Source of the DNA: Takakia lepidozioides
Lineage: Eukaryota > Plantae > Bryophyta
DNA: 64,000 nt
Direction: 5' to 3'
Assembly: GCA_030704615.1 (NCBI GenBank)
Contig: CM060732.1
Location: 53,134,001 to 53,198,000 of the forward strand
Positions within the stretch are counted from its first letter, which is position 1; each line of letters begins with the position of its first letter. The position numbers and the translations under genes are program-made. Shown here piece after piece: positions 1,609-41,400 of this stretch. Below the pieces are notes generated by a model, which worked only from the letters and a program-made list of their open reading frames with translations, searched no databases and was not told where the DNA came from.

Positions 1609-2871
1609 GAGGGAATTCCAAAAAGGCCTTGATGTGAAATGCATAGCAATTCACTTGATCACCCCCCTAAAAGTGCGCAATTCAATTGAATTGCAAGGCC
1701 TTGCAATTCAATTGAACTGCTAAAACTAGCTTGGCAACAACCCTAATTTGCAATTCAATTGAATTGTTGGCACACGATTCAATTGAATTGTGAATTTGCA
1801 AATCAATTGAATTGCCAATTCGCAATTCAATTGAATTGTAATCTATAATTTTTAACTTATTTTTGTATATAATATATAATATACATGTATATGTATATAT
1901 TTAAATTATACTTATACACATATAAGAGGATAAGCTAAAAATACATGTTGCTCGTCTATTCTTGCTAGCCCTCTTTCTTGTGCCCTTGAGGAAATTGTGG
2001 AGTTGTAAAGCCACCCTCAGCCTTAGCGAGAAAGGGAGAGCCAGAGACGGAGAGAGATCAGTAGCTTCCTGTGATTCACTGATAAAAGAAACATGGCTGG
2101 CTCCGAAAGAAACAAACAAAATCAAACCTGACAATTGATGAAAGGCTTCCCCTGCATAACAATGTAGTCCCTTAACACTAGTATCTGGCCTAGGACAAAG
2201 AAAACAAAAAATATGTTCATCTTGAGAATTATCAAAAATAATATTATTTCGATACCCTTACAAAGGTATCATGTTGAAGTTGGGATGTGTGTTCCATATA
2301 AGTTTAATATATCAAACTCTTACACGTTGATACTCTTACATTGGTATCATATTTGGTATATGTACATAGCCATATATTGGCACCCTATTGGCACCAACAT
2401 CCACAAAGAGAGACAATCTCGCTTTTACAAGCGCGCTTCGTGACTTCCTCTCTCTCTCTCCCTCTCTCGCTCTCCCTTAGGCTTATCTTGGGCTCAAGCC
2501 TTACCACGGGCAAAGGGTTGACAGACGGACAACAAGAATAGTCGGGCAACATGTATTTAGCTTATACATGTGTATGCGTATATGTATAATTTAAATATGT
2601 ACATATATATAATATATTTAGATTACAATTCAATTGAATTGTAGTCAGCAATTCAATTGAATTGCAAATTAGGGTTGTTTTCAAGCTAGTTTTAGCAGTT
2701 CTATTGAATTGCCCTTGCAATACAATTGAATTGCAAATTAGGGTTGTTTTCAAGCTAGTTTTAGCAGTTCAATTGAATTGCCCTTGCAATACAATTGAAT
2801 TGCGCACTTTTAGGGGGGTGATCAAGTGAATTGCAATGCATTTCACATCAAGGCCTTTTTGGAATTCCCTA
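1609..2871. mobile_element. Non-autonomous TIR element of the same family as the IS3EU-like element at 25254-38120
   Basis: Inverted ends (G/T)AGGGAATTCCAAAAAGGCCTTGATGTGAAATGCA...CACCCCCCTAAAAGTGCGC at 1609 and 2871. The imperfect TIRs are ~360 bp and hold repeated CAATTCAATTGAATTG. The subterminal region 2445-2560 resembles 37810-37950. No convincing ORF and no clean TSD. Confidence 0.85.
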
Positions 2872-7021: not shown

Positions 7022-7022
7022 G

Positions 7023-7765
7023 ATTATGCCAATGGGGCTGGAAGTAGATTTTGCATCTCTTGGGAATGATGGTTGTTTACAGGTCGAGTGTGCAATGGGG
7101 GAGATATATACGGACTCCATGATCAGGACTTCATCCACAATGGGAAAAAATTAGTAAATCCCTTGGACAGTGCATCACGGACTTTGGTGTTGGGTGATGA
7201 GGTTGCTACATTGAATCATGTGTTATTGGTCTACCATTCATTTTCAGTGGACAAGCATGGACTTCGGGAATGTGATATCAAAAGAGAAGATCGACAGAAT
7301 TGGGCAGCAGCTCATCGACTGGCATCTCGGAAGGTGCAAGCTTGTTTGAGGGAGTTACAATCAACTGTGAATCATCGAAGAGAGAGGACCAAAGGTACTG
7401 AAACTTACCTATACATCATTTCATGCTACATTGACATTTTTTTGTCTCCTCACATGTCATTGTGTGAGAGGGTACAATCTGCTGCGAAGGTATCATTTTT
7501 TTTCAGATTGTGGAAGTTGTGGCTATTCCACCACGAGGTGTATAATCTGAAATCCTTCTTCATTAGCAGGGAAGGAGGGGTCTATACGTACGATTTGACG
7601 GATAACATGATGGTTGATTTGGATTCCATTATCGCGTTAGCATGTTTAAAGTACAATGTCAAGTCAAACACATATGTTCTTGATGCAAATGACCGAAAAG
7701 TCTTTGACAACTTTATCAAAGGCAATTTTTTTTTAATTAATTTGTTAGATTTTATTATGTTTTAA
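7023..7765 (+). pseudogene. Truncated DNA-transposon transposase fragment, P-element-like
   Basis: ORF 7073-7765 has QDFIHNGKKLVNPL, DRQNWAAAHRLAS, GTETYLYIISCYIDIFLS and FFFRLWKLWL, resembling the DxxH..K..RN and downstream insertion-domain motifs of P-type transposases. In-frame stop just upstream; apparent internal deletion after FFISRE. Confidence 0.5.
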
Positions 7766-7994
7766 ATGAATAAATTCGATATAATATAAAAACATACATA
7801 TACATATTGGAGGGTTATTTTTAATGATGAAAAATGAGAATATACATACAGAAGGGGGTACTTTCCAAAAATTGTAAATTTTTGTATATTTACAGGAGGG
7901 GATTTTATAATCTTCAAAAAATATGTACAGAGGGGGTATAAATTATCCAAGGACCCGTATACATGGGGTTTTTTTATTAGGCGACGAACGCACG

Positions 7995-17076: not shown

Positions 17077-20000
17077 ACACCATTCAATTCTTCCGCTTCA
17101 AAATACTCATACTCACTTTATCGCACATCTCCGTAGCAAAGCGAGGCTGATGAGACGATTTTGGAAGTAAGTGAGATTAAGCACCGGACTGTAATGGATA
17201 TGTCCCGGGCTATCCTATCACTCCAAGTATTGAACCATTTAATATCACTTTTAGTGTTGTTTTTTGACAGGTAGCCCTACCTTTTTTGTGACAGGTTAAT
17301 TTTTTTTTTGATTTTCACTTTGACAGACAACTTTCAGAAAATGCCTTTCACATGACAGGTTGACAAGATTTTGACCTTTCACACAACCATGTCATACGAA
17401 ATAAAAAATAAAAAATGAAAAGAAGTGTGTAGTTTGAAGTGTGAACTTCTTACACATCTTTGGGGGCTCAATCACTTAGACTATGTTGCTTGCTGGACCT
17501 TGGAAGACCTTGGATCATGCGCACCACACCTATGAAAGTGCAAATTGCTGGAGTCCTAATTATAAGTGCCCGTCACAATGTGTCCAACAGAGCAAGGGAC
17601 TTGGACAACCAGTCTTTACATGCAGACGAGGCTCCCAATAGCTGCATCCCCAAACTACTACTAGATCGTTGTGAACTTAAGGCCCAAGTGCCTGTTTCTT
17701 GAAGTAAATCTTGAGCGCTAGATGACTAAAGTTGCCATTTCACAACCCGGAGCAGTATATGAGAACTAGTGTTGTCTGCCTTGGCGAACCTTAAAATTTT
17801 AAAATGGAATATTTTCCATGGATGAAATCGCCAAACAGAGGATGATATAAATGGATGAAAGTACATAGGAGGATGATTCTATCCAAATTTCAATGGATGA
17901 ACAGAATATATACCTATTTCTTGTAAAACTTAATAGCCACTCGTGCTATTTTTCAAATTTAAGAAAAAAATCACCGATGAGAACGCTTCAAAGATCAAAA
18001 TCATCGAAATTTAGCTAGCTAATCTTGGGATTGTATTCTTCCAATAAACAGAAATGACGTGCTCGAGCGTGTAACCACAGCAGCTAGAGTCAAATACATA
18101 TTGCAAAACAATGGTCAGGACATCACCTGAAACGTGGGTAAGTTAGCACTGTTAAGGTTTATGATAAAGATCTACGAGCTCTACTCATGGGCTGTAGCTT
18201 TCATTGAAGGTAGAACCCAAGACCCCCTGAAGAGTAAGCCAACCTAGAGGCCTGCATGCAACACGCAACTGACAGCCCACAATTCAGGCCCTTGAGGAGG
18301 GGGAAAAATTAACCCCCTTTCATTTATGGGCCATGGAGGCACAACGGACGATACGCCACAAACAATCCCCACAGGGAGCAGGGCAGCGGCTTTGAACCTT
18401 GGACCACCAAGGCGACGCATTGTGCACTTAACTTACCAGCCGATGTGCTTGTACATTTCCTTTGTAATTTTTACCTTTCTTTTGACAGGCCATTTTCTTT
18501 TTTGCCTTTCACTGTGACAGGCAATTTTTTGTTTTTTCCTTTCTTTTGAAAAGGCCGTTTTTTTTTTTGCCTGTTTTTGCCTGTCAAATGCCTTGTGACA
18601 GGTGCAAAAATCAGCGCAAGTTGCATGGCGACGAGACTGGAAGGGGAGGAGTAACGGACATGGCGTCTTTTTGCAGCTTAGCGATACTTCCTTCCTCATC
18701 ATGGCTCTCACCCTGCCACTGCCTACCCCTTGCATCTACTCACGCAGCTACAAGCTTGTCTGCAAAGACGTCCCTGCAAACACTCCCAGGTTTGTTCGTC
18801 AGTCGCTGTTGGGCACGCATTGATTACAGAGACTTGGACGGGCCCTAAAAGTTTGAGGTTGACTTGGGAATTCATCGATGGCCAACTGTTTGTGCTCACT
18901 TCCTTCAGTCGGAGCTTTGAGTGCAAAAAAATTTAGAACTATGTAGAGGTGTGGAGTGTCTGGAGGTTGCAACTTGAGCCATGATGCCTGTGAAGGTAAT
19001 GTTGAGCAGATGCGGACAGCGAGGAGCAGGGGCGACTGCCCAAAACCATCGGTCGCCGAGTTGTGCTGTGGAGCGGATCGGTGGCAGCATTTGCATCCAC
19101 TGTTGGTAGTGGGAATGTTGCACTGGCTGATGTAAAAATTGCGCTGTCCAATATTCAGGCTGCACCTGTCCCATGCCCTGGTAAGCTTGAAGCACATGTG
19201 AGGAAAAAATACAATGTGTGAAGTCTTTGGTGAAGAATCCTGCGCTTGATCTGGAATTCCTTGCGTTGGAATTGTTCATCACTCGATCAGAGAATTTCCG
19301 GGAGGTGTTCTATGAGGTACTTGGTGAAATGCCATATTTCACAAATTTCACATAGGGCAGTAAGTATTTGGTCTTGATAGCCTGCGCATTTGCATGTGAA
19401 TCTGTGAAGTGCTGGTGTAGTTACACTCTACAGTTAACTGAGGGCATTGCCAATTTCTGCTCCGCGCGGCATTTGTATTTTTGCCCCAGTATTGATCGTG
19501 TGAAGAATTTAAGAGCAAATTCTAATCCGTACCAGCGGTTTTAGACAGCCTGAGATCATCAGATGCGACTTCATACACAATTCTCACAGGAGAAGTGTGG
19601 AAATCCTGGGGTTTTAATATTATCTCCAGGGGTTCTGCCCATGATGATTGGACCATGTTTTGCTGTGCAGCCACATGATCACCTGGGGTGCTATGACCCT
19701 ATGTGTGAGCAGATCCTGTCTAGTGTGTGGAATAGATATTGGTAGTTTGAACCAAGTATTAGGAAAAGGTATGTTGTGAGAATCCAGGTAGACCCTTAAT
19801 GTTCCCCACACTCAGTCATGGGTATCTATCTGTTCATGGAGAGGGGTTGGTTATTTTGCAGGATATATTTGGCAGGGTCTATGATGCTCAAGGGGAACCT
19901 GCTTTGGACACTGTGAGTTGCCAATCGTTTCTGGGAGAATAAAGAGATGGACACATAGGGAAGGTAGGATTTGCACATTACTTAGTTCGGTGCTCTGAGT

Positions 20001-22919: not shown

Positions 22920-25919
22920 GTATGTCTACGTTTACATCTATATGCACTGTCCATATGGATGGTGTCAATGGCTTCAAGGCCAGTGAAAGCAAAGTCCAAA
23001 TGTCTCTTCCTGAAGGCATGTCTAGACCAACTCGTGGATCAATCTGGAAACAAAAGATCTCAAGGAAAAGTGATAAGGGCACTCCATTAGTGCTTGAGGT
23101 GGGAGCAAAGGTGGTTTAAGGGCAGAGAAGGTTGCTAACAAGGGTGTGGATTTTGCAAAAATGAGTGCAGGATGATCAAACTTTAACAGCTGTCCATCAA
23201 TGCAAAACCGGGGCTCATTATTAAGGCCAGCAGAGCTCAACGCATTGAGTTCAATACAACACAGCAGAGGATTTGGAGAGGAGAAAATTACGACGAGTGA
23301 AGTGTTCGATGAAGATTTTCTTAACCTTCAAGCGTACATAATCATTACTACTAAAAATGCGCATAAACAAAAGCTTGTGTGCCTCCAAACCATGGGTCCA
23401 CATGTGTGTCTTCTGTGCATGCCAAACATTGATACAGAAACAGAGAGCCTGAGTTAAAAAATGTAGGTTGCGTATCAAAACATGCATTGCTTCACTTTTG
23501 CTCATTAAATATGCAGGTATGCAGGCCTGAGATGGTATAACGAATTTGTTTTGAGAGAGCCATATGTACACACGGAGGAGAAAACACAAGATTCATGTGG
23601 AGCCATTCTGATCAGTATGTGATGTCGATGTCTGACCATAATGAAAATGCAGCACAGATAATTAATATATGAAGCAAGGCAGTTCGTCTGTTTTGTTTTG
23701 TAGTGTTGAGATGTCCCAAACCGCGGGGGCCCAGCCCTGGTGCTTGGTACCGTTGGAAAGCCCTCGATGAGGAGGGGTGCACCCGCTTGGTCTCATGATT
23801 TTTGGCCCAGCGGTGTGGGACATGTGGAATTTCAAGTATTTCCAATTTCCTTCTTACACCCATTCATGAGCGCCCTATCAGCTCTCGGTTGTTATTGTAG
23901 CTTTGCTGTCAAGAGTGGATGAGACATTTTGCGAAATTAGGAGCTCTAATATTCTGCAATCAATTGTAATCCCATAGTTTATGCTGTGTTCTATGGTCGT
24001 CTTGCTGTGCTTCCTTAATCATGGACATGTAGTGGACACTGCTTGTTTGACCAGCCATGGATCGGTGCGTGTGAAGGTTGCAATAGTCCATGGCTTTGTT
24101 GTGCAAGAGAAGCCTCTGAAACAGACAAACACTTGCACTTTTTTTCTGTTTGCAGGATCAACATACATATCATCCTCTCAGAGGTACACATTTATTGCCC
24201 AAGTGAGCCTTATGGGACGTTCTCCTTTGTTTGCAGAAGAGACAACTGAAATTAGATCTAACCCACAGCTCAGAGCTAGCCTCAGCTGGTCGCTTGACAT
24301 TACCTGTCATGAAAGCTCTCAGTGGTTTCTGGCCTGGCAATGTAATCTTGTCTCTGAAAAACCCTCCGAGTTGAGTGGGATTCAAATTTGACCAATGCCA
24401 TTAGGTTTTCTGGCTCCTTTGCTGAGACTAAAAGTTTGACCTCAAAGAAAACATATTAACTGCGTTGAAATAAGTACATGATAGGAAACGGCTCCTACTT
24501 AGCCTTTAATTCTCTGTTTCGTGAACAGTGAAATAATCGGATCATTACCTAGGCTGTCTCTGAAACTATCACAAGCTCACACCAAATGCTATTCTTTTTT
24601 TGATAACTACCATATCATATGTATACATATGTAACATGATTCGGCGGAGATTAATGATGATACTTGTACAGAGTTAAGTCTGAAGTCTGATTCAGTTCTC
24701 TATCTGACCCATTCCGGGTGTCCAGAAGCATCTGATTGGAGTCAGTTGTTCGCCTGTAGACTACTGGTATTTCTTTCAAATAGGTCTATGCACAACTGCA
24801 TTTCAGATGCTTGCTTTTCAGCAAAAATTGAATCACTTTGGATCCCTGCTGACGATGTCCAATATGGTCCGATATATTCAGTACATAGGATTGTAGGCAT
24901 TGTTTTAGATAAGTAGTTTTCAGCAGTTGTAACAAGAGCAGCTAGGTATTATTGCAGATAACTGGATAATACTTCATCTCTTTCAAGTTCAAATGCACTT
25001 CCCAAGCAGTTCTCAAATTCGGATTAAAGTTTCCACGCATGTACCCTGACAGGACCATGGATGGCTCAGGGAGGTTTAGAACTACTTATTAGTATCCAGC
25101 TGGAACTATAGATGTATGATAGGTAAGTGTATACATGTACAGATAGCCTCCATGGCCTACATTCGAGAAGGGACATCTCCACTGGAGCTTGGGAGAAGTC
25201 AAGAGGTTTTGCCAGGGGGCCACCAGGGTAACCGCCCAAACCCTGACAACATCTAGGGAATTCCAAATAGGCCTTGATGTGAAATGCATCGCAATTCACT
25301 TGATCACCCCCCTAAAAGTGCGCAATTCAATTGAATTGCAAAAACCAGCTTGAAAAGAACCCTAATTTGCAATTCAATTGAATTGTCGGTACACAATTGA
25401 ATTGAATTGTGAATTCACAATTCAATTGAATTGCCAATTGACAATTCAATTGAATTGCCAATTGACAATTCAATTGAATTGTCAACTCGCAATTCAATTG
25501 AATTGCAAACTATAAATTTTTACGGATTTTTGTATATAACGTATATAATATATATATATGTATATGTATATGTATATGTATATTCATCGTATATACATAC
25601 ACATATGAGAGTATAAGCTGAATATACAACTATTCCTGCTGCCCGTCCAGGAATGGGACAGGGGAATTGACAGTGCGTACTACGAATGGAGCCATGGTAT
25701 TTATTGACATATTTGAATTTGTTTCTAGAGTCTTGTGAGCAGGGAAGTGAGGACCCGGGACAGTGCAGCTGATCCAAAGTTTTCGGTGGATTCTAAAGTA
25801 GTTGTGTTTTTCTTAGTTGGTCTTAGGCTTGGATTTTGTTCGGCCTTCCGCAATTTTGATCGGAAGAAACTACTTCATTCTCGTAGCGAAATCCCCCATC
25901 ACCTTCCAAATCGGGGAGA

Positions 25920-26190
25920 CGTCACTCACTCTGCCATCGTCGGCCTCCTGACGACATTTGAAGAGAAGGAGAAGGCCATGAGGCCACGGAGATGGGACAC
26001 AATGGAGTACCGGCAGACAGGAGATGATGGTGTTTTCTTTGAGGTATTTTGCAACCCAAATGCATATGCAATTGCATTCCAAGCCAAAGTTTTGATAACT
26101 ATCAATGATGACAAGATCAAAGTTGCGTCGGAAGGTCAGCTGAACGCCCTCAAGTCTGATGTCGATCAATACGTGGATTCTCAAAGTGAG
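25920..26190 (+). pseudogene. Captured fragment of a conserved hypothetical protein resembling a cyanobacterial/algal family
   Basis: MEYRQTGDDGVFFEVFCNPNAYAIAFQAKVLITINDDKIKVASEGQLNALKSDVDQYV recalls the cyanobacterial motif F.E.FCNPN....F.AKVL.T (recognised from memory). Lies just inside the left TIR. Confidence 0.5.
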
Positions 26191-27364
26191 CCTAGGCTTT
26201 GTTCCTCGAAGCAGTTTAGGTTTTTGTAGTTTCGAACCAATGTTTCCAAAATGTCTCGAGGGCTTTGATGAGAAGCTTTTTCATCATGCCATGTATAGAA
26301 GAGGATGCAAATGGTTTACCCTAAATGTTCAATGCTGGCAAATGAGCTGCTGCCTTTGCACTACATGAACTAGGGAGAAATAGCATAAGAATGGCTACTG
26401 TCACATTTTCTAGGAAGAAGAGACTTTAAGGTGTCTTCTATGTGCTATCTTCCCAAGGAACCAGTGATGTTGGCTTCAGCTGTGTTGAAAATTTTGACAG
26501 CCCCTTCCTACACAGACACTTAGGTGAATTTTGGCTCAAGTGGTCTACACTTTTGACTCCCTTACATAATGGTAGCCAAGTAGGTTGGTCGTATTCCCTC
26601 GGACATGCTACTTATGGATTGCCATTACCTATGAGAGGACTTTAGGAAAGAATAACCATAAGAGGGGGTTGCCTCTGATCTGACTATACTATGAGATTTT
26701 TCCAATCTGTTAGGTTGGTGGTATGGTGCATAGTCACTATATATCTGTGAGGTGTGTTATCTTATCATTTCCAAAACTTAACCTGTCCAAGCTTATAAGG
26801 GATTCTAAGTTGGACTTCCCTTCCAAGTGGAAGACTTGGACAGCCCTTCGGAATTTTACTAGAGGAGATTTAGCAATATGTCCAGTATACTTAGTGGTTC
26901 AATGTGCTGCTTCACTAGGTCTAGTTGACTCTCAAAAAAATTATCTACTGAATGAGTTCGCTGGAAAATGCTAACTAGTCATGAACTTTGTCTACAATTG
27001 AAGAATCAAGCCTAAAAGTAGGAGAACCTCTCAGTAATCTTGTGTGTCTTGCATCTCTGGGTCCCCTAAACAATCAAACATTGCTCTATTATCTATAATC
27101 ACAAGTATTCCAACAAGTGAACTTATGGTTGCAGTGCTATGGACAGGCCCCTGTGCAGATCCTTGAGATTTTTGCTCCTGTCCTGCTGCTCTGAGGATGT
27201 ATTATGAGGAGAAGTAGAGTTACTTAAGCGAGCTTAAGCTTATGCTTATTGAGCTCAGACATTGCAACAACAGCAGGTGTGCAAGGTGGTGGGCTACGAG
27301 CGGCATGATCCCAACTCGAAGGGTATGTCTCTATTTCTCTTATGTTTTGAACTAAGGTCTTCTA

Positions 27365-28235
27365 CCGCAAGTTGTGGTATCATGGAGTGCAATGATTGCA
27401 GGATATGCCGCATGGTTGTGGGATGAAGGCTTGGAGACCTATGAGCAAATGGTGCTGAAAGGGGCAAATAAGTCTATGTGCTGACATTAGGAAAGCTAGG
27501 ATTGTACCAAATATTATTCTGGAAAATGCCCGAGTGGACATATATGCCAGATGTGGGAGTATCCATGATGCAAAGGGAGTCTTTGACAATATGGCTAAAC
27601 AAGATGTGGTGTCGTGGAGTGCACTGATTGCAGGATATGCCAAACATGGTTGTGGGATGGTAAGTTGTGGTTTACAACTCAGATTGTGATAGTGTAAGAC
27701 ACAAGAATATACGCTGTTGGAGGCACTACTGTTTTCTGTTGCTTGCCTTGTACTTGCTTATGGCCCCTCAGCTGAAGGTGTTAATACAAAGCTGATTTAG
27801 ACTACCAATGTCCCAAGTGTAGTCTTCATTAACAGAGCTAAGAGCTAAGATTGTGTCTCTGAGATGTGCAGGTGAGAGTACAAGAAGCCAGCAAAGACAC
27901 TCGGATTCTTGAGCTTTGCTTGGATCATCTAGGGGAGGCCGATGCCCTCCCTCTTGTTGAAACGCTGACTATGGTGGAAACCTCAAAGATTGAGGCAGTG
28001 GATGTGGTCTTTGGAGACCTATGAGCAAATGATGCTGAAAGGGATAAAGCCCAACTAGGTAACATTTGTTTGCCTTCGCAATGCATAGCAGCCGTAGAAA
28101 GGGACAAAGAGGTCTATGCTAACATCTGGAAAGTTGGGATTGTACCAAGTATCATTCTTGAAAATGCCCTTGTGGACACACATGCCAAATGTGGGGGTAT
28201 CCAGGATGCAAAATGGAGTGTTTGACAATATGGCT
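27365..28235 (+). pseudogene. Degenerate PLS-class PPR gene fragments
   Basis: VVSWSAMIAGYA, SIHDAKGVFDNMAKQDVVSWSALIAGYAKHG, and a second related copy at ~28010-28235, with frameshifts. Confidence 0.75.
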
Positions 28236-29167
28236 TGAGTCCACTGCCTTTGGCCATGAACTGTTGCATATTGAAGGTTGAGCACAGGGCAACTAGTGGG
28301 AGCTTTGCCAATGTGCAAGGACTCGAGTGGGAAACTTCGATAGGAAATATGACCCTGTCCACTGTGACTTAAACTGTTACGGATTGTGCTCCTGGGACTT
28401 CCATTGGGACCTGTGAGCCAAGCCTACAGGGCATGTGTACCTCAAGGATTTCATATTCTGACACTTGTAGAGACTGTGGCCTGCATCACTTCTCGGTAAG
28501 GCAAACACACTATAAATGTTAAATACTTTTGTAATCTGAGAAGTAGCTCTGTTGCTTTAGGATGAAGGGAACCGTTCCCGTTCTAGTGAAAAAAGACTTG
28601 TCTGGGTAAGAGTAGGTGTGAAAGTTACTTGACAAGCTTTTGTGCAAATTGTAACAATAGTCAGGGTTTATTGTGGGTACAGGGAAGCTACATGCACCAC
28701 TCGTGACAAGGTACATATCTGAATCAATCTGAGACATGCTTATTTCAGATGTGGTGCTCAGCATGGTTAACAATGTTAGGAAATGAGTTTAGGGAGCTGG
28801 TTGGCTTCATTTTGTTTCTGGTGTCATTTCCATTGGAAGGGTGTGACTTGAACCTTGATAGCCAACAACATGTGTTTGCAGTGCTTGTATTCTTTGAAGA
28901 TGTGAGCAAGAAGGCCCTAACTGGTAAACTAGTCTGTGAGCAAAACACATGAAGAACAATTGGAGTGAAGGGGTTAGTGTTTGTGTCATGGCTGGTCTGT
29001 AATGCTTGGAATTAAGTAGGTTACTGAAGAATTAAGCCAGCACACAATGGAAGACTGCTGACCGTGTGACATTTGAGCATTGGTGACAAAACTATGCCAA
29101 TTCCTCACAATGTGTAGGGAATTCCAAAAGTTCCCATTGTTTAATGGATCTCAACTCACAAATGCAC

Positions 29168-29455
29168 CAACCTCTATAGGTATACCAAAGAGGATCACTA
29201 CTACATAATGACGATACCTCTACTAGCATATATAGCTAAGTTTCTTTGTAAATCAAGCGTTATACCTCTGTTGATATACTAATAACGGCTACTACCTCAT
29301 GACAATACCTCCACATAAATATACACTGATTTAGCAAAATTTATTTGTAAATCAAACGCTATACCTCTATAGGTATACCAAACAGGGAAACTACCTCATG
29401 ATGATACCTCTACCTACATATAGACTAATTTTGACTTAGTTTCTTTGGAATGCAA
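29168..29455 (+). repeat. ~100-bp tandem repeat, 3 units, upstream of the HECT gene
   Basis: Unit contains TATACCT-ctgt-AGGTATA (hairpin) plus CTACCTCATGACGATACCTC and AGTTTCTTTGTAAATCAA. Hairpins at ~29168, 29261 and 29360. Confidence 0.9.
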
Positions 29456-29505
29456 CAGATCTCAATGGATCTCAATTCTTACTTTTTTCGCAAGTTCACA
29501 AATGC

Positions 29506-32500
29506 GTGCACGATATAGAAATGTCCAAACAAGATGAAGACTGGACGCACCACTTACAGGATATTGACCCTGGTTGTGCATCACAAAACAATGAGGATTC
29601 TTTAGTACAAAACTTGCCACAAATCCCGCGTCGAGTAAGTGCATTTGTAGGGCATATTCGACAGCAAGGTGAGCATTTTGCATATCCACCCAGATTTGGA
29701 TTTTTTTCAAGATCAAATGTACTAGCACCACCCCAAGACCAAGGTCACGACGTCCAAGGTATGGCAAATGTACCAAGTCTTTGTGGACCTACTCAAATTG
29801 GCACTGTCAATGACTTGAATGTTTCTGTTCCTCGAAACATTTGCGAGTCAAGAACACAACGAAGAAGACAGCCTCAAGCATCTTCTAATGTGCCTCCCAA
29901 AGATATTCAACGGCGCATCCATATGCTTCCAAGGTCAACAGAGTGGTCAACCTATCGTGAGGCTTTAACGCCATTGATTTCCAACTGGGTTCCAGACAAC
30001 CCAGTTGTTTTGGTCTCTCTCAAAGCAAACCTTCAGTGGGGTGGGCAAATCTATCCCGAGCCATTCTGTCTTGGAACAGTGGAGTTTCAGATTGCTGCCC
30101 ACTTTGCACAACTTGAGCCTCATCCTGCACACCACGGGATTAAACAGTGATGTCTCTTGGTTTGGATTGATGGAACAATCAAGTGGCAATATTCCGACTA
30201 GCAGCCTTGGAGATTCTGATTCAGATTTTATGAGTGAGCCGCCTCGAGGTGGATGTAGGAACGTGCAACGGGGGAATGTCCAAGGTCACTACAATCTGGC
30301 ATTACCTGCACCGCCAATCACAACAACGCATGTTGGTATGTCCTCCTCATCTAGTATGATTGTTAATGAGATGGACATGATCTCCTCAACACCCACTCAT
30401 TGTACATGGGCAACTGAAGATGAAGTTCTCAACAATATGGCAGAGACATGGATCAAACATCAAGAGGCATACTTCAAGGCATTGGGGGAACGTGATGTTA
30501 AATCTGCATATGAAGCACTTGATGTCCACAAGGATGAACAGGGATCCCAAGCTTTTTGGTCAGCTTTTGACATATTTAAAGTTGAGCTCCATACAGATTC
30601 TTTCAATGATGAAGTGTTGAGACGTATTGGTAACGAGCTCTTTAAAAGAAAAGAGCTTCGCAGGGGTTCCACTACATCTGAGGCTAATCTCAGTAGGGTT
30701 ACTATGCACCCTTCCATGAGCATGTATAATCCTGGCGATATTCGAATTCAGTTTGAGCTCATGGCGCGACCTTTTTGGAAAGATTGAGATGCATGGGATC
30801 TAGCTATCTCTAAGTCCTCGAATGTTGGTCATGTATCCCAACAGCAGAAGAGATTCTACAACACTACAGCATCAATGGAGGTTCTCTAGGTGATGAAGAT
30901 CACACCTTCAGTCAAAGAATCCATGAGACATTGAAGTTATGTGCTTTTACCAAATTTTCAAGGGCCCACCTTGAGCTTATGTGTTGCTCAGACAAAATTG
31001 AGACTCACCAAGATGAGGCGACACTTTTGCAATCAAGAGAGAAGGTTGATGAAGCCATATTGAAATACCAACGGTATTATATGAGTCAAATTGTTTTCAA
31101 GTCGTACAAAAGATGGTTGGGCTTTTCCAACATCACTATTACCAAGATTCCGGTGGGTTCATGCACTGTCATGATCGTATTTAATTTTGTAAGCTTGCTT
31201 TCACTTAGAATTAGACATTTCGAAGTTGTTGAAATTTTCGTGTTGTTTTTCAAGGTGACCCAAACGAAGGAGCTTGCTATAGACCAAAGGTTGAATTTAT
31301 TCATTCCAGCGGCATTGCTGAAAGATTGACTATCGATGAAGATGGTTTGCGTGATGCATGGCTTACAAATACTTGGAAGCAATTTTGGTCTACCTCTTTC
31401 GTAAGCAGTAAACACAAACTTTTTTCATGTCTTAAGATTATTTGTAATCTTTTGCTTTGATGCACATTTTGCATACTTAGGAATGTTTTTTGTGCTTTTT
31501 GTATTTTATGACAAACTTGAATTGTACTAGCAAAGACTGATGATTTTGTTGTTGGTTTTCAGAGCTACAATTCCATATTTGAATATCCTGATAATCTTCA
31601 AGGAAAGTTGTTGCATCCAAAATTGGATTATGAGGTCATACGCACAGACATTCAATTGGATGCGGTGAGATTTGGATTGCAAAGTCATTTGTTTTATATT
31701 GACATGCATGAATTATTTTTGAAGATACTCCCAGGACAGTCATTTCTTGTGTTTGAATGTTAGGTATAATTGTTGATTCTTACTATTTGTTTGTGTATAT
31801 TGCAGGCCAAAATGCTAGGGCATTTGATCTTCATGCTCGCATCGAACGAATTGGAAGTCTCAAGACCTTTTTCATTCGCAACTTTGGTCATGTTTTGTGA
31901 CCAAGTCCCCGAGTCCAAAAACATGCCCGTTGGTGTGAAGTCCAAAATGAAAAAGGATTTAGAACGTGATTTTCGATTGGGCTGGGCTGCAAAATGGTCA
32001 ATCTTAAATTGCCTTAGAAAATCAAGAGAGGAGGCAATGAAATTGATTCGAAGACTCCAAGAGGATGAAACACATGAAGACTTGGCTTGGACATTCTCGG
32101 ATTTCAATCTGACAGAAGAAAATTGGGAATCTGAAGTTGAGCACAAGATTGGAGCCATTGTTTGGAGTCATCTTTTCAATGGACGCAATTTGATTGTGAA
32201 GGCAATGCAAGAGGGGTTTTACATGGCTGTGGAACAAGCACCATGTGCACCCACCATAAAGGATCGAATGAAAGACAATTTGAAAGGCATATCTCCTGAT
32301 ACAATGCGTGTTGTATTCAATGGTGCCTGTGCAATTGAAGCAAATGATTTCTTGAGGAAGTGCATATTTGATGTATCTATATTGCCCCTCCAACAAGAAT
32401 GGTTTCGAGATTGTGTGGATCAAATGACCTATGAGGTCTCGATTGGCTATTTTTATCACTGGATTGGAGTACTTTGGCGGCAAAGACATCAATATACAAC

Positions 32501-32640
32501 TTCTCAATCGACACGACTATCCATGCATTCAAGCAAGCACTTGCTTTCAAGTTCTATATCTTCCCCCATACAAAGATGCCTCAATGATGATGACGAAGAT
32601 TAAATATTCTACCATGGATAGTAGTTATGGTCGTGCATGA
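29506..32640 (+). pseudogene. Spliced HECT-domain E3 ubiquitin ligase-like gene (frameshifts/stops), transposon cargo
   Basis: Exons ~31283-31400 (VEF...TIDEDGLRDAW), 31563-31664 (SIFEYPDNLQGKLLHP) and 31806-32640 (AKMLGHLI..SRPFS, KAMQEGFY, EWFRDCVDQM) join in phase 0. After a frameshift near 32430: RSRLAIFITG...QASTCFQVLYLPPYKD..MMTKIKYS..SYG. Putative catalytic Cys codon at 32542-32544. Disrupted N-terminal ORFs at 29506-31110. Confidence 0.8.
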
Positions 32641-33977
32641 CATGTGGAGGTGAAGGGTGTGAGTCATGGCTCAAACAGAGGGGTTGATTTTGTGGTATCA
32701 TAGATAATTGAAATGCTCTTGGAGTGGTACTGTGAGTGTGACATCTGGTTGAATGTTAAGTGTTACAAGTTCGCTGAGTATATGTGAGGGTAAGAATCAT
32801 GGTAAATGTGAGAATTCGAGTGCAAGTTCAAATGCAAGGGAAAGTTTGAGTGCGAAGTTGAGTTTGAGTGCGAGGTTAAAGGCAAGTTGGAATGTCAGTT
32901 CGAGTGCGAGTTCAAGTGCAAGTCTGGGTAGATTATAGAGGGTTTGAATCTGAAGATTCCATGGAGTCCGGCCAGATCCAATCGTGTGTTAGAGAATTGA
33001 CAAGTCGGGAACAAGCGTGTGTGCAACGGGTGCCTTGTGGCGAAAGGATGAGATTTTATGAACGAAGCAAATCAATAAAGTATGAGAAGGGGTTAAAGAA
33101 AAAGAAGAGATGCAAAGGAAGATGATAGAGAGATGGAGGGAACTTGTCTTCCATTGATTATGTTTGTTTATATCTGTTGAGAAGGATTGAAGTAAAGAGA
33201 GACACAATAGTGTCAAAGGGAGGGGAGGGTGGGAATATGTCTCTTTAAGTTCGTCCTGACCGAAAAGAGAGCTCAACAAAGAAGGAAAAGAAATGGGGGC
33301 AACATTGGGGCAAGTGTCGTTGGCTCCTTTTTGTTTGTGTTGGCTTTGGAGAGGTGCCATCTGGTTGTGGCCCAAGGATGGGAATCCATTTTTGTTGTCG
33401 GTTGTTATATTTCCAGCTGTTGGTGACTTTTGCACAGACGTCATCAATGGATGAGGATTTTGACAGTGAGGTATAGCTGCGGTCCCCTATCTTCTTGCAC
33501 CCATTAATGGAATGCTGCTATATTGCATATTTAATATGGTAAGTGGAGTACTCTATTATAAAATGTTTACTAGCTAGTTTTACTTTCTTATGCGCTGTAT
33601 GAAGTGCTCTAATATGTTTTAGTCTTGGGGAAGAGGGTGGGAGAGAGGCCCACCTGCCGTATGATTTCTGTAAAGCTTCAAGACATTATTACATTGTAAA
33701 TATCAAAACATGAGAAGTATCACAGTTCAAGATTGTCTTCTTTGATCAATTGGTCATGCCCTGTTGTTGTCCTTGAAAGCTAGTGAAATCTCACACATGT
33801 TTTAGGGTTTATCCAATGTCATATTAAGGTTTAGAAACATCCACAGCATTACACAACTGGCAATAAGAAAGTGGGTAAGGTAACATGTGTTCACTAATTT
33901 GGGCACTCTTATGGTCTTATGCAGATATGTCTGAGCTTTTGCTGTGCAGGAAGTCATTTTTCAGCTGCGACCAGGGG

Positions 33978-34730
33978 CATATAGACTAAATTATCTTAGG
34001 TTTCTTTGTCTTCGAGACACTATATCTCTGTAGGTAAACCAAACATGACTATTACCTCTTAACGATACCTCTACATGAATACAGCCTGATTTATCTTGAG
34101 TTTCTTTGTCTATCATGCGTTATACCTCTGTAGGTATACTAAACAGGGCAACTACCTCATAACGATACCTCAACCTGCATATAGGCTGATTTGACCAAGT
34201 TTCTTTGTAAGTCAGGCGCTATACCTCTGGTGGTATACTAAACAGGGCTACTGTCTCATGACGATACCTCCGCATAAATATAGATTAATTTGGCCAACTT
34301 TTCTTGTAAAATGAAATACTATACCTCTGTAGATATATCAAACAAGGCTACAACCTAATGACGATACCTCTACTAGTATATATAACTAAGTTTCTTTGTC
34401 AATCAAGTGTTATACCTCTATCGGTATACTAATCAGGGCTACTACCTCATGACAATATCTCTACATAAATATACACTGTTTTTGACATCAAATTTATTTG
34501 TAAATCAAACGCTATACCTCTGTAGGTATACCAAACAGGGAAACTACCTCATAACGATACCCTTACCTACATATAGTCTAGTTTTGACTAAGTTTCTTTG
34601 GAATCAAGCGATGTACCTCTGTGAGTATACCAAACAGGGCTAGTACCCAATGACGATACCTCTACCTGCATATAGACTAATTTACCAAAACTAACTAAGT
34701 TCCGTTGTAATCAAGCACTATACCGCTACA
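33978..34730 (+). repeat. ~100-bp tandem repeat, ~7.5 units, downstream of the HECT gene
   Basis: Same unit as 29168-29455. Hairpin starts at 34021, 34121, 34220, 34320, 34411, 34513, 34612 and 34719. Confidence 0.9.
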
Positions 34731-35956
34731 CCTGCGCAAAGGGCGTCCATTCAGTAGAGGTTGAAACTTGACTTGGGCATCTCAAAGTAGACTCCTAACC
34801 TATCATGCCAAGTGATACCATTCATCATCATACCTGTCATACCTATCATCATCATGCCAAGTGTAAGGTTGTTGACCACTTATGTGAGAAAAACAAATGT
34901 TACATGGAAGCAAAAAGATTATACTTTGTGGTTGTATAGGCTACAGGAGTGTTCCAGAACCTGGAGAGATAGACCTCTCGGTGGCTATGGAAGCTATACA
35001 ACAGTTGGATAAACCATGACTCCAATCAACAGAACACAAGTTATCAGATTTGAAACTCAAGCTACATGGCATATAAGAGACAAGGGTGCAGCTATAAGTC
35101 CTGGTTGAATATTCGTGTCTCCATGAGTGTATATTCAGATTTTTAATACTGTATGCAAAATTCTTAGATTATGAATAGAGGGTTCTTGAAAATGAGGCAA
35201 GTTGGTCATCATTGTCTCATATGTGGGGCAGACAAAGATTGTTGGAGATAAAAGGCGGCCTCATGAGCCTCACGCTGTGCACTTCCCAATGAAACCCAAC
35301 AATTTCACAATCCTCCAAAGATCGTGCAACCCAGGCCCTGCCCCCAAGTAGTATGGTTGGGAGATGATAATGGTTTAGGGTGTATGGTTCAATATGGACA
35401 ATGGATATGATGAAGGGAAAAGATGACATTTATTTAACATAAATCCTCAAAGTACATGACATAAAACAATTATCTTTGAATGTGATTGTCCCACTTGTTC
35501 ACTTAATCACAATTACATACAAGAGCTTGTGTAATTAAAAGTTGGAGAACTTCCCTACTTAACACGGTATTACCAATGAGGTCCAATTAATCAAAATATC
35601 TATGTTCATGCGTTGCCAAACCACAATACCGAGACATGTAGTAGTGGAGATGAAAACAATCCTTCCCAACCTTTCCAATTTCATAAGCTTGTGCACGGAC
35701 ACGAACCATGTCAGGAATGAGTTCAGCTCCTTTGGTGGGAAGGTCATGCAAACCACCTGCACATCGCCACCTTTGATTCCCACGAGGCCCCAAGCCTTGG
35801 TTACCAATGTGTTGGGGGTCTTCTCTAAATCGTGGGTCATCAATAAGGTGGCTGGTCCATCTACATGATCAAATACATCACCACATTAGAATAACATTCC
35901 AATGTAAATTGTAGCTTAACAATGAAAGTACAAACAAGAGAAAACCATGAGCTTAC

Positions 35957-37289
35957 CCATGCAAACGTTCATACTCGCGAAAGAAACGAGCATGAACATG
36001 TGATTGACGATATCGACCGTTTTCATTAATCGTGCGAACTCGATGTCCATTCCAAATCTTCACGTATTCATCAACAGCTTCTTGTACTATGGGCATATAT
36101 ACGTCAATAAAAGATTCTCGTTGCCACGGATCGTCCATATTCAATAATCCATCATTGACCATTGCTTGGAAGCAATTTTTGTAGTAGAACATTACCTTCT
36201 CCTATAGATGCCGCCAAAAGTGTTCAATCCTCTAACGTGGTGATTACACCACACAAAATATTAGAAAATATGCACAACATTACACACTCAATGATTAATA
36301 AAGATGAACCAAGAAATATGACAGAAACGTAAAGTTGATATGCAAGATAGAATTGTATAGAGCACTAATCTGATTGTGTGTGGAAGACCCAGTCAAGTAC
36401 GGATTGGGTGTTTCAGAACGTGTGGCTTCAATGTGTTGTTTTATAAGAGAGTGCTCTACTGCAAAATCAGATCGAATTCGTAAAGGTGCTCTAAACTTGG
36501 AAACTGCATCGTGATATCCTTTGAAAATGGTTTTTTCTTTCTTGTTTCTTGCAACGTTCGCCCATAAAACAAAATGAGAGGCCCCATCAATGCCAACATG
36601 TACTCGAAGACCAAACATAACCAATTTGTCATAAGCTGCACCACGAATTGCATACATGTTTTAGTCTGCCTACAATTTTGTGCGATATGTAATGCAAGAA
36701 AACGTCTTGCATGTGCATCTTCAAAGAACATTAATATGCATGAGATAAAATACTTACAGTCAATGTGCCATAGAGCCATAGGCATTGTCACATTATACTG
36801 AGTCATCCGAATTGCTTGTGCCCTTCTCCTACGCTCATAATGGTAGGGTGAGATGATTTTCAAAGCTTCCCCCACCTTCCTTCGAGGAATCCGCAAATTT
36901 GACCTCCTTAAGGCAGATTGCACTGTTCTCATTCCCCAATTTGTCCCATTCTCTTCAATAGGAAGTAACTCTTGAATCTTTTCACACAAGCGTTGGACAC
37001 TCAATTGATGATGAACTTTGAAAGGAGACCCTTGGACTTCTGATAGCAATCTTCTCAATGGTCGTACATCATCAAAAGAAAGGGCAGTGGCGATTGATTT
37101 CATTGTGGCACCCTCATTCAACATTGCTTCCACATAAAGTACTAAATCATCCACTACTTTATCACCATCCAAATGGTTGTTTTCCATGCTCACATGATCT
37201 GTCTTATCTCTAATAGCCCCAGTGTCAATGCCTTCAACCTTGCCCTTGTTGTAACTGTTTGCTGTTAATTCTGTAGTCACTGCATCCAC
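35957..37289 (-). pseudogene. IS3EU-like (IS3/IS481/integrase-core) DDE transposase, intron-containing, inactivated
   Basis: Exon ending 36758: HTH-like region, GMRTVQSALRR..IPRRKV, QYNVTMPMALWHID. Exon 36635-36370: SYDKL..GLRVHVGIDGASH..PLRIRSD..GSSTHNQ. Exon 36231-35957: RIEHFWRHL*EK...WNGHRVR. D-D-E triad in WHID / RSD / RIE. Premature TAG, and a donor reading AT instead of GT at 36369. A further exon toward 35559 is possible. Confidence 0.88.
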
Positions 37290-38164
37290 TCACACACTCC
37301 CCATATGACTTACGTCACTAAAGTTCACATAGGCTATCAAGTAGATGAACCAAATGTACTTTGAAACAACAACTGCTCTATCCTAAAATGTATTAGCAAA
37401 CCACAATACATAGTGTGGGCGGGTTGAAGACAAACCATGTGATCAAGCTCTTTCTTTCAGTGTGTGTGTTGAGGAGCGTTTGGTAGCCCACTCTACTACC
37501 CCTAAAGTTCTCTCCTCAAAGCTCATGAGTCGCCTGCACGTACACAAGAAGTACAGCTTTAGCTAAAATGATATCTTTATCAATGATTGGGAGAACTCAT
37601 GCCAGTATGGGAATGTGCTTATTCATGGGCAGATCTTGTCATTTGGTGATCCAAGAAGGCTTCCATAATACATAGCGCCACCACCGCTCCACCACCGCTC
37701 CACAAATCTCTTGTTGTTGCATTCTTCTCTCGCTACTTCTCGTCCTCCAACTGATTTGATCCTTTCACTTTTAGGACACCTCTGCCCTAAAAATTCTTCA
37801 TCACTTCATTTCTCTCTCCCTTTCCCTCGCTCTCGCTCTCTCTCTCTCATCTCTCTCCTTTAGGCTACGCGACTCATCTCGTGACTTAGGCCTTACCACA
37901 AGCAAAGGATGGACGGGCAGCAGGAATAGACGGGCAACATGTATATTCAGCTTATACTCTCGTATGTATATGTGTATATGATGAATATATATACATATAC
38001 ATGATATATGTTATATCGTAAAAATTTATAGTTTGCAATTGAATTGAATTGCGCACTTTTAGGGGGGTGATCAAGTGAATTGCGATGCATTTCACATCAA
38101 GGCCTATTTGGAATTCCCTAGGCATCACCTTCCATTTGTGATCTAAAGCCAAAGCCCTCTTTCA

Positions 38165-38759: not shown

Positions 38760-41400
38760 CCTTCCTGACCAGCCTGGATCCCACGGAGAGCTTAGTTTAC
38801 TACACTCCGAACGACTATATCATGGAGAATTCTGAAGTTCAGGGCGGAATGCAAAACCTACGCAATGAAAGTAAAGGCAAGGAGAAGGTCATGGAGTCAG
38901 AGGAATCAGAGGAAGATACACATTTTCTTACAACTAACCATGTTGCCACTGAGGTGGATCTCTTTCAGGATGGACCAGGCAGAGCGCTGACCTTTATGGA
39001 CTTAATGGACAGAGAGACTCCTTCAGATCAGAAGAGATTCGAGGAGGTAGTGCTCACTACTATAACCCCTTTGCGGTTTTAGTACTGGAGTGAAAAAAGT
39101 ATTCTACTGTGTATTGTCTTGTTTTATGCGTGCAGATCTAGTATTTCTAGTGCTCAGGTCACCACTCGAGTCTAATTGCTACTGAACTGGATTTCCCTCA
39201 GGCTAGAATGATTTCGGAGCTGCAGCAGTTTTTCGGCTTATCGGACACAGATCTCAAATCTGCAGAGATCGGACTGCCAGGTACCCACTAAAAATGTTTT
39301 TCCATCCAGCTTGAGATGGTCATCATATCCTCTTTACAATAGTACCCTAGATACGAAAGTGTGATAGCTGATACGTACTGGCCATCGTTGTCTTCAACTC
39401 GCTCTCCAACGTTGTAGAATTTTCTCCTGTTTTCCTGACCTTTCAAAAACGACCTCATTGCCCCAGGCTACATATTGGGGTACTACATTTGGTGCACATT
39501 GATCATTCTCCTGACATGGATGCAATTTAAATTGGGTGATCAATCATGCAGAGTGACTGGGACAATGAGCAAAGGCAAAAAATAGACTGGGAAAGTGCAA
39601 AACATAAAGCAAAATTGTTGCACACCCCTATATCCAGACCTGATGGCAGCCCATGCGGCTTGTCAACGGGTTGTGACACCTGTGGATCAGACCCCATACC
39701 TTGATGAGCAGCTTGCGCAGGCTCAAGTTGAAACAATCAAGAAGTATTGTGTTCTGTACCCAGATGAGATTGATATCAGCCCAGAAGAGAAGGCCGAGCT
39801 TGATCAATTCATGGTAAGGTCGAACCCCTAATAGATAGGAGATGGGATTCCAGGACCTAGATCAGTCACCAAGGTTCCATTTATGAAAGAGTAGGCTTTA
39901 GAGTCAGTCACCTACTGGAAAGCAGCTCAACATCGTTCTTTCCTTGAAAACTACAAAGTCATGTATATATATATGGCATGAACTATATGATAGAGCCCAC
40001 TGTACCTCAAAGGGAAAGTGGGAAAGTACCCACAAGAGGACCAGGCTTGATAGGCGAACTTCGCCGTCAGGGTCATCTTTTCTCTGTGTGTACTTGGCAT
40101 AATATGGCCGAGATTTAATGCTACTCAAGAGCTAAGTTATGATTCAGTTCTCTTTACATGATCTATTCCAGCTGGTGTGTAGAGCATCTGACTTTGTTCT
40201 TGGCAGAGCTGCTATCTAGATCTATGGACAACAGCTTCATTTCAGATTCTTGCTTGTTAGCATACATTGACATCTGTCTTTATGCTGCACTTGTCGTCTG
40301 GATTTTGGATTTTGCAGGTCCACCATTTTATGCTAATCACTGCCTACTGCAAGGATCAGCTGCAGCAACGTCTTAACAGGGCTGTGAGTGAAGCTATGAT
40401 GTTTTGCTGGAACACAGAGCAGGAACTCTACAAACTGACAGGTAAGGAGAACTTGGGCTTGCATGTGGTTGTTAGTACCTACTGCAAAATAAGGTAGCCG
40501 CGGATTGGAGACACCTGATCTAGGAAATTGAGCTCAAGCCATTGTACTTCCTTTAGCCTAGCCAGAGGATGTTAAAGAGTCTAAGGGCCGAGCTGCGTTC
40601 AGAGGGCCTGGGTTATAGTTGTACAGAGGTAACTAATTTGGAAGGGCACTATGAACGTCGAGTTATCTGCAAGTTAAATACTTGGCTGCTCTTATTACAA
40701 CTGTCCTTGGAAAGTTACTTACCCGTAGAAATTAACAATGCGTGGACTCTGCAGGAGCATTCCCGGTTTATGGCAAGGGAGCAGCTACTCTCTCACGATC
40801 AAGCTCGGCCTTCTCTTCAGGGCTGATATCAAGCTGATCAAGGTCCAGAACTGAATATTTCTTGCTAACAATCGGAGCCTGCGTTAGCTGCTCATAAAGG
40901 GCTGGGATTTGAGCCACAGGTGTACCAACACGAAGGCAAGCAGCGTGGGCCGCCAGTAGGTCTGGATATAAAGGTGTGCCACAATCATTGCTGTCTGTTT
41001 TGCATTTTCACATTCTACGTTTTGCCTCTGTACATTGTCCCAGTAAGTCTGCATAATCACTCACCCGAAGGCGCCTGTGAGGAATATCTGTATACCATAT
41101 AATACTCTCCGACCCTCAGGTACCTGTCCTCGACAATTTGTCCCAAGTCGGTCCTTCCTCGGGTCCTTAGGAGGTCCTTCGCGCTCTAGTAGCTAGTACT
41201 GGCGTAGCTCCATCCTTCCTTACTGGTGCAAAGTACCCGCTGATCCATGGACGAGAATCTCCAATGTTCCTCCCGCAGCAGTTCCCTGTAAAAGCTTTTG
41301 CATCACTGTTAACGCAGATCAAGGGACGCTAGCCCCTCCTCAATCCCTGCAGGCAAACCTTCACCTCAGTCATCAACATAATCTTGAACAAACTAGAAAA
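38760..41400. mobile_element. Two degenerate, oppositely oriented copies of an unclassified coding repeat (possibly LINE ORF1)
   Basis: 39540-39700 (+) is homologous to the reverse complement of 40905-41060; both translate to TPLYPDL.AAHAAC.RV.TPV. Acidic N-terminus with KGKEKV at 38822. Many stops. Confidence 0.4.

What the first reader, a model, noticed from the sequence alone, without database searches (positions are those of the whole stretch)
25254..38120. IS3EU-like DNA transposon in a plant genome pairing a DDE integrase with a HECT E3 ubiquitin ligase
Seen in sequence: 79-bp perfect outer TIRs with TA termini, flanks AACATC/GGCATC, a minus-strand spliced integrase-type gene (WHIDSYDKL..HVGIDG, RIRSD, STHNQRIE), and a convergent plus-strand spliced HECT gene. 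Established knowledge, as I recall it: this motif set matches IS3EU-type eukaryotic transposases, reported with TA-starting termini, 6-bp TSDs and a second ORF, mainly from animals, fungi and stramenopiles. HECT-like second ORFs may already exist in animal members. Inference: this is a plant lineage of the superfamily whose cargo ligase could ubiquitinate host silencing factors or regulate the transposase. This copy is inactivated.
Basis: partly seen in the sequence, partly recalled or inferred. Interest (0 to 1): 0.9.

Follow-up and report, generated by a model that had tools for sequence, protein, structure and literature searches.

The report
Broken GingerRoot transposon with ubiquitin ligase
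This is a broken copy of a jumping gene from a family already known in mosses and clubmosses; its second gene is a ubiquitin ligase that related elements also carry and keep under selection, which no paper I could search describes.

Summary
In detail: 79-bp perfect TIRs with TA ends, a spliced minus-strand DDE transposase and a convergent four-exon HECT gene. The transposase is a GingerRoot/IS3EU enzyme. That lineage was already described in Selaginella and mosses, so 'new plant lineage' is wrong.

The HECT gene is a standing part of the element, not a one-off capture. Eight related elements from four other samples carry it with the same transposase. One is complete, with TIRs and a perfect 6-bp TSD. 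Both genes are under purifying selection and their distances correlate (Mantel r 0.85). A relative's domain folds as a two-lobed HECT; the catalytic Cys is kept here and in most relatives.

This copy is dead, with at least five HECT breaks and four transposase lesions, and its TSD matches only 4 of 6. Sister copies are transcribed and spliced (transposase only seen). New here: three gene layouts across relatives, and captured host fragments in the left third. The substrate is unknown; anti-silencing is my best guess.

This scan already reported the same pairing at other loci of this genome.

The parts
25248..25253 (.). left flank hexamer AACATC (probable degenerate TSD)
   Evidence: 4/6 match to the right flank
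25254..25649 (+). left terminal inverted repeat arm (79 bp perfect at 25254-25332; includes a 24-bp AATTG-rich array at 25370-25505)
25969..26190 (+). host-like exon fragment, unidentified; weak Atlas likeness to small cyanobacterial proteins (score 0.89, lead only)
   Evidence: no meaningful Pfam or PDB hit
27368..28235 (+). captured PPR-gene fragments, internally duplicated, broken
   Evidence: PF01535 E 1.6e-7; duplications and a match to 58713-58771
29115..29128 (+). internal copy of the first 14 bases of the TIR, at the border between host fragments and element sequence
   Evidence: 5 matches in the window against 0.05 expected
29170..29451 (+). 99-bp repeat array upstream of the HECT gene (88% identical to 34323-34604)
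29521..32640 (+). HECT E3 ligase gene, four predicted exons (introns about 31153-31254, 31401-31562, 31665-31805); unknown N-terminal region of about 550 aa plus HECT domain; catalytic Cys codon 32542-32544; at least five breaks
   Evidence: introns predicted from GT-AG signals and colinearity with relatives, not seen in RNA
33977..34727 (+). 99-bp tandem array (about 7 copies) between the two 3' ends
35500..37187 (-). GingerRoot/IS3EU DDE transposase, about 440 aa; introns 36757-36636, 36369-36232, 35956-35861; D at about 36760, D at 36468, E at about 36224; stops at 36204 and 35589, AT instead of GT donor at 36369, 9-bp deletion at 35657
37280..37624 (-). 5' UTR intron of the transposase transcript
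   Evidence: loose end of an RNA contig at 37279 continues at about 37625
37910..38120 (-). right terminal inverted repeat arm (79 bp perfect at 38042-38120)
38121..38126 (.). right flank hexamer GGCATC
1609..2871 (.). non-autonomous (MITE-like) member of the same family: both TIR arms, no ORF, no clear TSD

Best explanation
A dead copy of a two-gene GingerRoot/IS3EU cut-and-paste transposon. Gene 1 is the integrase-like DDE transposase. It binds the conserved end motif TAN-GGAAT(G/T)CCAAAA..GGCC and inserts with a 6-bp stagger (motif shown; 6-bp TSD shown in one relative; binding inferred). Gene 2 is the element's own HECT E3 ligase. It would take ubiquitin from host E1/E2 onto its C-lobe cysteine and pass it to a substrate recruited by an element-specific N-terminal region, probably in the nucleus, to help the element move (fold, Cys, linkage and selection shown; activity inferred). 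For the substrate I favour a host chromatin or silencing factor (about 0.45) over the transposase or transpososome itself (about 0.3). This copy also picked up about 3.5 kb of host gene fragments and is now broken in both genes.
For: Linkage: the HECT relatives in L001, L005, L006, L007/L010, L017, L027, L028 and L032 all have an rva_4 transposase within about 5 kb. L002, L004 and L033 lack one in the fetched DNA but are 88-93% identical in DNA to those families; L004 and L033 keep the terminus and L002 a TIR arm. The one locus found through the transposase alone (L031) has the N-terminal part of the HECT gene downstream. L006 is complete: 1866-bp TIRs at 98.9%, TA ends, TSD TACCAT on both sides. 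Selection: HECT pN 0.16 against pS 0.65 for L007/L027 (omega about 0.12, same as the transposase); synonymous sites are saturated between the window and all relatives while pN is 0.32-0.47. Shared history: Mantel r 0.85, p 0.0003 (9 elements), and r 0.76, p 0.007 (7 elements); all four supported shallow clades are shared. Fold: the model of relative P0065 (pLDDT 78) matches HECT domains only; HECTD3 Z 14.0 over 213 residues, E6AP Z 13.7 over 220, and the best non-HECT is 5.6. The Cys of the TCF motif is kept in the window and in most relatives (replaced in L028, P0062), and an aromatic residue sits fourth from the end. A basic KKRK stretch is present in the N-terminal region of relatives. Spliced transposase RNA comes from sister copies. 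Precedent for counter-silencing passengers: fungal IS3EU carry TET/JBP and alpha-kinase (PMC12730594), and VANDAL elements carry VANC (PMC5735166).
Against: No ligase activity, substrate or HECT transcript was seen; the RNA run covered only the transposase. The N-terminal region has no Pfam or Atlas match and its model failed (pLDDT 40), so nothing points to a substrate. All but one of the loci were found through the HECT, so I cannot say what share of GingerRoot elements carry it. The transposase data reject the HECT tree (AU p 0.002), although the HECT data do not reject the transposase tree (p 0.053); the conflict lies in two long branches. Physical linkage alone would give correlated distances. 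The TSD here is only 4/6.
Confidence: 0.7

Rival explanations
1. The ligase acts on the element's own machinery. It ubiquitinates the transposase to strip the spent complex from DNA after integration or to limit copy number, as ClpX does for MuA (my knowledge). No host defence target is involved.
For: The HECT has stayed with one transposase lineage over saturating divergence, and its N-terminal region has no likeness to host UPL substrate modules.
Against: Rust-fungus IS3EU carry other enzymes in this slot (PMC12730594), so the transposase does not need a HECT in general. No interaction data exist.
Confidence: 0.3
2. The HECT is a recently captured host UPL fragment (Pack-type cargo) with no role, like the PPR pieces.
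For: GingerRoots capture gene fragments in 29% of copies (PMC6839031), and this copy holds such fragments.
Against: The whole gene is present, is under purifying selection, and occurs in divergent families with 19-86% identity in the N-terminal part. A full HMMER scan of 1.84 billion proteins and a profile search returned no named host UPL. One cluster has 10 members, most on long contigs.
Confidence: 0.04
3. The 12.9-kb unit is a composite. The real two-gene element runs 29115-38120, and a second copy of the end at 25254 mobilised it together with 3.5 kb of neighbouring host DNA.
For: An exact terminal 14-mer at 29115 (0.05 expected by chance) sits where host fragments end and element repeats begin. 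The left arm breaks off sharply at 25649.
Against: There is no TSD between 29115 (flank AATGTG) and 38120. The MITE shows that both family ends normally carry the long TIR, which 29115 lacks.
Confidence: 0.35
4. The HECT is a catalytically dead scaffold or decoy that binds E2 or ubiquitin.
For: It is very divergent (at most 27% identity to solved HECTs), and the His before Thr-Cys is replaced by Ser.
Against: The Cys and the terminal aromatic are conserved across families. From my knowledge, HECTD3 also has Ser-Thr-Cys at this motif.
Confidence: 0.08

Closest known systems
GingerRoot of Selaginella lepidophylla and mosses (PMC6839031)
   Same: Integrase-like DDE core: 54 of 115 residues identical to the Sl-GR-005 core printed in the paper, counted by eye. 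TA..TA ends, TIRs of 100 bp or more, size within 3.9-12.9 kb, captured gene fragments, 6-bp TSD (in relative L006).
   Different: The paper has no mention of HECT, ubiquitin or a second ORF. It found little expression, whereas spliced transposase RNA is seen here.
IS3EU of Repbase (animals, fungi; PMC10045372, PMC8232023)
   Same: Same lineage as GingerRoot. The oyster IS3EU-1_CGi core reads WHIDSYDKL..IDG, RIRTD, STHNQRIE. Described as encoding two proteins, with TA termini and 6-bp TSDs.
   Different: No searchable paper names the second protein as HECT. Repbase entries were not available to check.
TET+ IS3EU of rust fungi (PMC12730594)
   Same: IS3EU with extra enzyme genes inside the TIRs; TAYGG ends resemble the TAN-GG ends here; proposed to escape silencing.
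   Different: The passengers are TET/JBP dioxygenase and alpha-kinase, not a ubiquitin ligase.
Cellular HECT E3 ligases (E6AP, HECTD3, NEDD4 family, plant UPL1-7)
   Same: Two-lobed fold, catalytic Cys motif, aromatic residue near the C-terminus.
   Different: At most 27% identity; none of their substrate modules; multi-copy and inside a transposon.
VANDAL/VANC anti-silencing Mutator elements (PMC5735166)
   Same: A plant DNA transposon with a dedicated second gene and tandem repeats in its non-coding parts.
   Different: Other superfamily. VANC is a DNA-binding demethylation factor with proven function; here the function is inferred.

Membership tests
IS3EU/GingerRoot | DDE transposase of the IS3EU core type | tested here: met
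   PF24764 E 1.7e-13 and 2.1e-8; motifs match published IS3EU-1_CGi and SL_GR rows; D, D, E kept
IS3EU/GingerRoot | TA..TA termini with TIRs | tested here: met
   same end motif in nine related loci
IS3EU/GingerRoot | 6-bp TSD | tested here: inconclusive
   4/6 in this copy; perfect 6 bp in L006; 4/6 in the old copy L027; none in the MITE or L005
IS3EU/GingerRoot | No gag, RT or LTRs; no HHCC upstream of the core | tested here: met
   No such Pfam hits or long direct repeats in the element; the N-terminal exon shows no HHCC by eye
IS3EU/GingerRoot | Groups with IS3EU/GingerRoot in a transposase tree with Repbase outgroups | not testable with these tools
LTR-retrotransposon integrase | rve core within gag-pol between LTRs | tested here: not met
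   rve E 0.06 only; introns present; TIRs instead of LTRs
HECT E3 ligase | Two-lobed HECT fold | tested here: met
   Model of relative P0065 (44% identical to the window N-lobe piece, 61% to the C-lobe piece): 18 HECT structures at Z 10-14.4, the next fold at 5.6
HECT E3 ligase | Catalytic Cys in the C-lobe and aromatic residue fourth from the end | tested here: met
   Cys replaced in a few copies (L028, P0062)
HECT E3 ligase | Ubiquitin thioester formation and transfer | not testable with these tools
   needs an assay
Host UPL1-7 | Orthology and UPL N-terminal domains | tested here: not met
   No named UPL among the hits; no Pfam domain in the N-terminal region; no tree against UPLs was possible

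The most novel reading that the evidence does not exclude
GingerRoot/IS3EU transposons of seed-free plants encode their own HECT ubiquitin ligase with a new substrate-binding region, and use it to destroy or rewire host silencing proteins. This would be a eukaryotic transposon that counters host defence through the ubiquitin-proteasome system, possibly across the whole superfamily.
Probability: 0.35. Interest if true: 0.82.

Novelty: new variant of a known kind. Interest (0 to 1): 0.56.

Why it matters
Few eukaryotic DNA transposons have a second gene of known function. A selected, element-borne HECT ligase names the second protein of a poorly described superfamily in plants and gives a direct assay: E3 activity and substrate capture. 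It could reveal a new route by which transposons disarm silencing or control their transposase. It also warns that HECT/UPL counts in such genomes can be inflated by transposon copies.

Tried and rejected
Searches with no or little result: the transposase exon gave nothing in the word-indexed protein search, viral contigs (62), prokaryote genomes (111) or plasmids (84), and one locus in JGI metagenomes (61). The HECT alignment was too diverse for a locus scan (110). Polyubiquitin hits to the N-lobe (P0032, P0041; E about 1e-5 to 1e-3) were rejected as summed-repeat noise. The N-terminal region gave no Pfam or Atlas match and an unusable model, so no fold search was run on it. Literature searches pairing HECT with IS3EU, transposase/TIR, G2E3 or moss TEs found nothing relevant. 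Kojima's 2019 review was not held.

Rejected ideas: (1) HECT carried by a DUF7869 element in L004 and L033; those loci are GingerRoot derivatives with other DNA inserted. (2) A simple inversion through the 99-bp arrays to explain the convergent layout; the arrays are in direct orientation. (3) The 4-bp deletion at 37210 as a coding frameshift; it lies upstream of the likely start at 37187.

Codon rows were concatenated only inside scripts for dN/dS and trees. The GingerRoot core printed in the paper has no reference here, so it was not typed into a tool.
Full report
Observation. The element runs 25254-38120. Its ends are identical for 79 bases and begin TA. Looser arm similarity reaches about 25649 and 37910. 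The flanks AACATC and GGCATC share four of six bases. Both differences are A/G. Against the family's contigs this copy shows an excess of A for G and T for C (46 of 83 differences in run X3), which fits methyl-cytosine decay of a 6-bp TSD but does not prove it. A 1.26-kb non-coding element with the same arms lies at 1609-2871.

Transposase. Minus strand, likely start 37187. Two exons match PF24764 rva_4 (E 1.7e-13, 2.1e-8); rve matches only at 0.06. Contigs of run X6, same species label, skip 36757-36636, about 36369-36232 and 35956-35861, two of them with clean GT-AG ends, and continue from 37279 to about 37625. So the gene is transcribed and spliced. The template is a sister copy: the RNA differs by a few percent and has 9 and 4 bases that this copy lacks. 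This copy has stops at 36204 and 35589, an AT donor at 36369 and an in-frame 9-bp loss. The core motifs match the published IS3EU-1_CGi and Selaginella SL_GR rows, and by eye 54 of 115 residues equal the Sl-GR-005 core. PMC10045372 puts IS3EU and GingerRoot in one lineage with TA..TA ends and mostly 6-bp TSDs. PMC6839031 reports GingerRoot from lycophytes and 18 moss data sets. A plant lineage is therefore known.

HECT gene. Plus strand, about 29521-32640, four predicted exons whose junctions restore colinearity with relatives. Only the C-lobe piece passes Pfam. The model of relative P0065 aligns over both lobes with E6AP (Z 13.7, 220 residues) and HECTD3 (Z 14.0, 213 residues); the best non-HECT scores 5.6. 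The catalytic Cys (32542) and an aromatic residue fourth from the end are kept. Breaks in this copy: a frameshift with a loss of about 30 codons near 30100-30150, a stop at 30785, a frameshift near 30800-30900, a deletion with frameshift near 31280, and a 5-bp deletion at 32432 that the dominant contigs of two DNA runs do not have. The N-terminal region of about 550 aa has conserved blocks and, in relatives, a basic KKRK stretch, but no Pfam, Atlas or structural assignment.

Relatives. HECT homologues came only from unnamed ENA, JGI and Logan contigs; no named host UPL appeared. Of eleven distinct loci with enough flank, eight have the same kind of transposase nearby: L001, L005, L006, L007/L010, L017, L027, L028 and L032, from four samples or sample sets. 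The other three (L002, L004, L033) are 88-93% identical in DNA to those families; L004 and L033 keep the terminus and L002 a TIR arm. A terminus of the form GGCC.TTTTGG.AT.CC.TA, close to the window's own, lies downstream of the HECT in nine loci. L006 is complete: 1866-bp TIRs, TA ends, TSD TACCAT on both sides, both genes inside. The single locus found through the transposase alone, L031, also has the start of the HECT gene downstream. The layout varies: tandem in most, divergent in L028, convergent here. The sample is biased toward HECT-bearing copies.

Selection and shared history. For L007/L027 omega is about 0.12 for both genes. Between the window and all relatives synonymous sites are saturated while HECT pN is 0.32-0.47. 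Distances of the two genes correlate (Mantel r 0.85, p 0.0003; r 0.76, p 0.007 without near-duplicates), and the supported shallow clades agree. The deep branches L028 and L032 conflict: AU p 0.002 one way, 0.053 the other. Linkage alone gives such a correlation, so this shows long residence, not co-adaptation.

Left third. 25650-29114 holds broken PPR pieces (PF01535) and an unidentified exon-like stretch, the usual GingerRoot fragment capture (PMC6839031). At 29115 the first 14 bases of the TIR recur (5 matches against 0.05 expected), followed by a 99-bp array that recurs, in the same direction, at 33977-34727. The 12.9-kb unit may be a composite around a 9-kb core; this is unresolved.

Mechanism. 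Shown: ends, DDE triad, splicing, HECT fold and Cys, linkage, purifying selection. From established knowledge: integrase-type strand transfer with a staggered cut, and HECT thioester chemistry. Inferred: the ligase serves the element. I favour a host silencing or chromatin substrate (about 0.45), by analogy with TET-carrying fungal IS3EU (PMC12730594) and VANC (PMC5735166), over turnover of the transposase (about 0.3).

Host and prior notes. PPR style and neighbouring genes indicate a land plant; organism names were coded. 'Moss' comes from earlier scan notes and was not tested. The scan had already reported the same HECT/GingerRoot pairing at other loci of this genome; those notes are not independent support.

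Verdict. Real; a new variant of a known superfamily; the HECT passenger is unreported in the literature I could search, but Repbase was not checked and function is untested. Interest 0.56.

Noticed in passing
window 1609-2871: Non-autonomous element with both long TIR arms of this family (96-98% over 90 nt); left end GA instead of TA, no clear TSD.
   Followed up: partly
window 34125-34383 joined to about 37855 (loose ends): Contigs in two DNA runs join the 99-bp array directly to the right subterminal sequence, which suggests another deletion derivative; many copies also lack 32781-33345.
   Followed up: no
joint 35858-36368: An RNA contig skips the exon holding the catalytic Glu, so an alternatively spliced, probably inactive transposase form may exist.
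   Followed up: no
L001, L002, L003, L006: This sub-lineage lacks HECT introns 2 and 3, and L001 and L006 lack a transposase intron (L006 both 3' ones) found in the window and other relatives; possible intron loss through RNA.
   Followed up: partly
L005:2420-3070 and 12665-13103: Two elements abut, separated by 6 bp (GGTATG); the far flank reads as its reverse complement rather than a direct repeat.
   Followed up: no
L004:1324-3964, L033:6251-9142 and 15173-17833: DUF7869 (PF25273) genes with RNase-H-like DDE-type motifs recur inside or beside these elements; they look like another transposon family.
   Followed up: partly
L006:6543-7616: Additional unassigned ORFs between transposase and HECT, inside 1866-bp TIRs.
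   Followed up: partly
window 3179-10941: Nested long inverted repeats (549 and 130 nt), 67-, 55-, 76- and 20-bp tandem arrays and a transposase-like ORF at 7073-7765 with no Pfam hit.
   Followed up: no
window 47298-48752: 484-aa hAT transposase ORF (PF05699).
   Followed up: partly
window 39534-41066: Inverted-repeat element of about 1.5 kb, arms about 80% complementary.
   Followed up: no
window 25969-26190: Captured exon resembling small cyanobacterial proteins, perhaps from a plastid-targeted host gene; Atlas score 0.89 is a lead only.
   Followed up: partly
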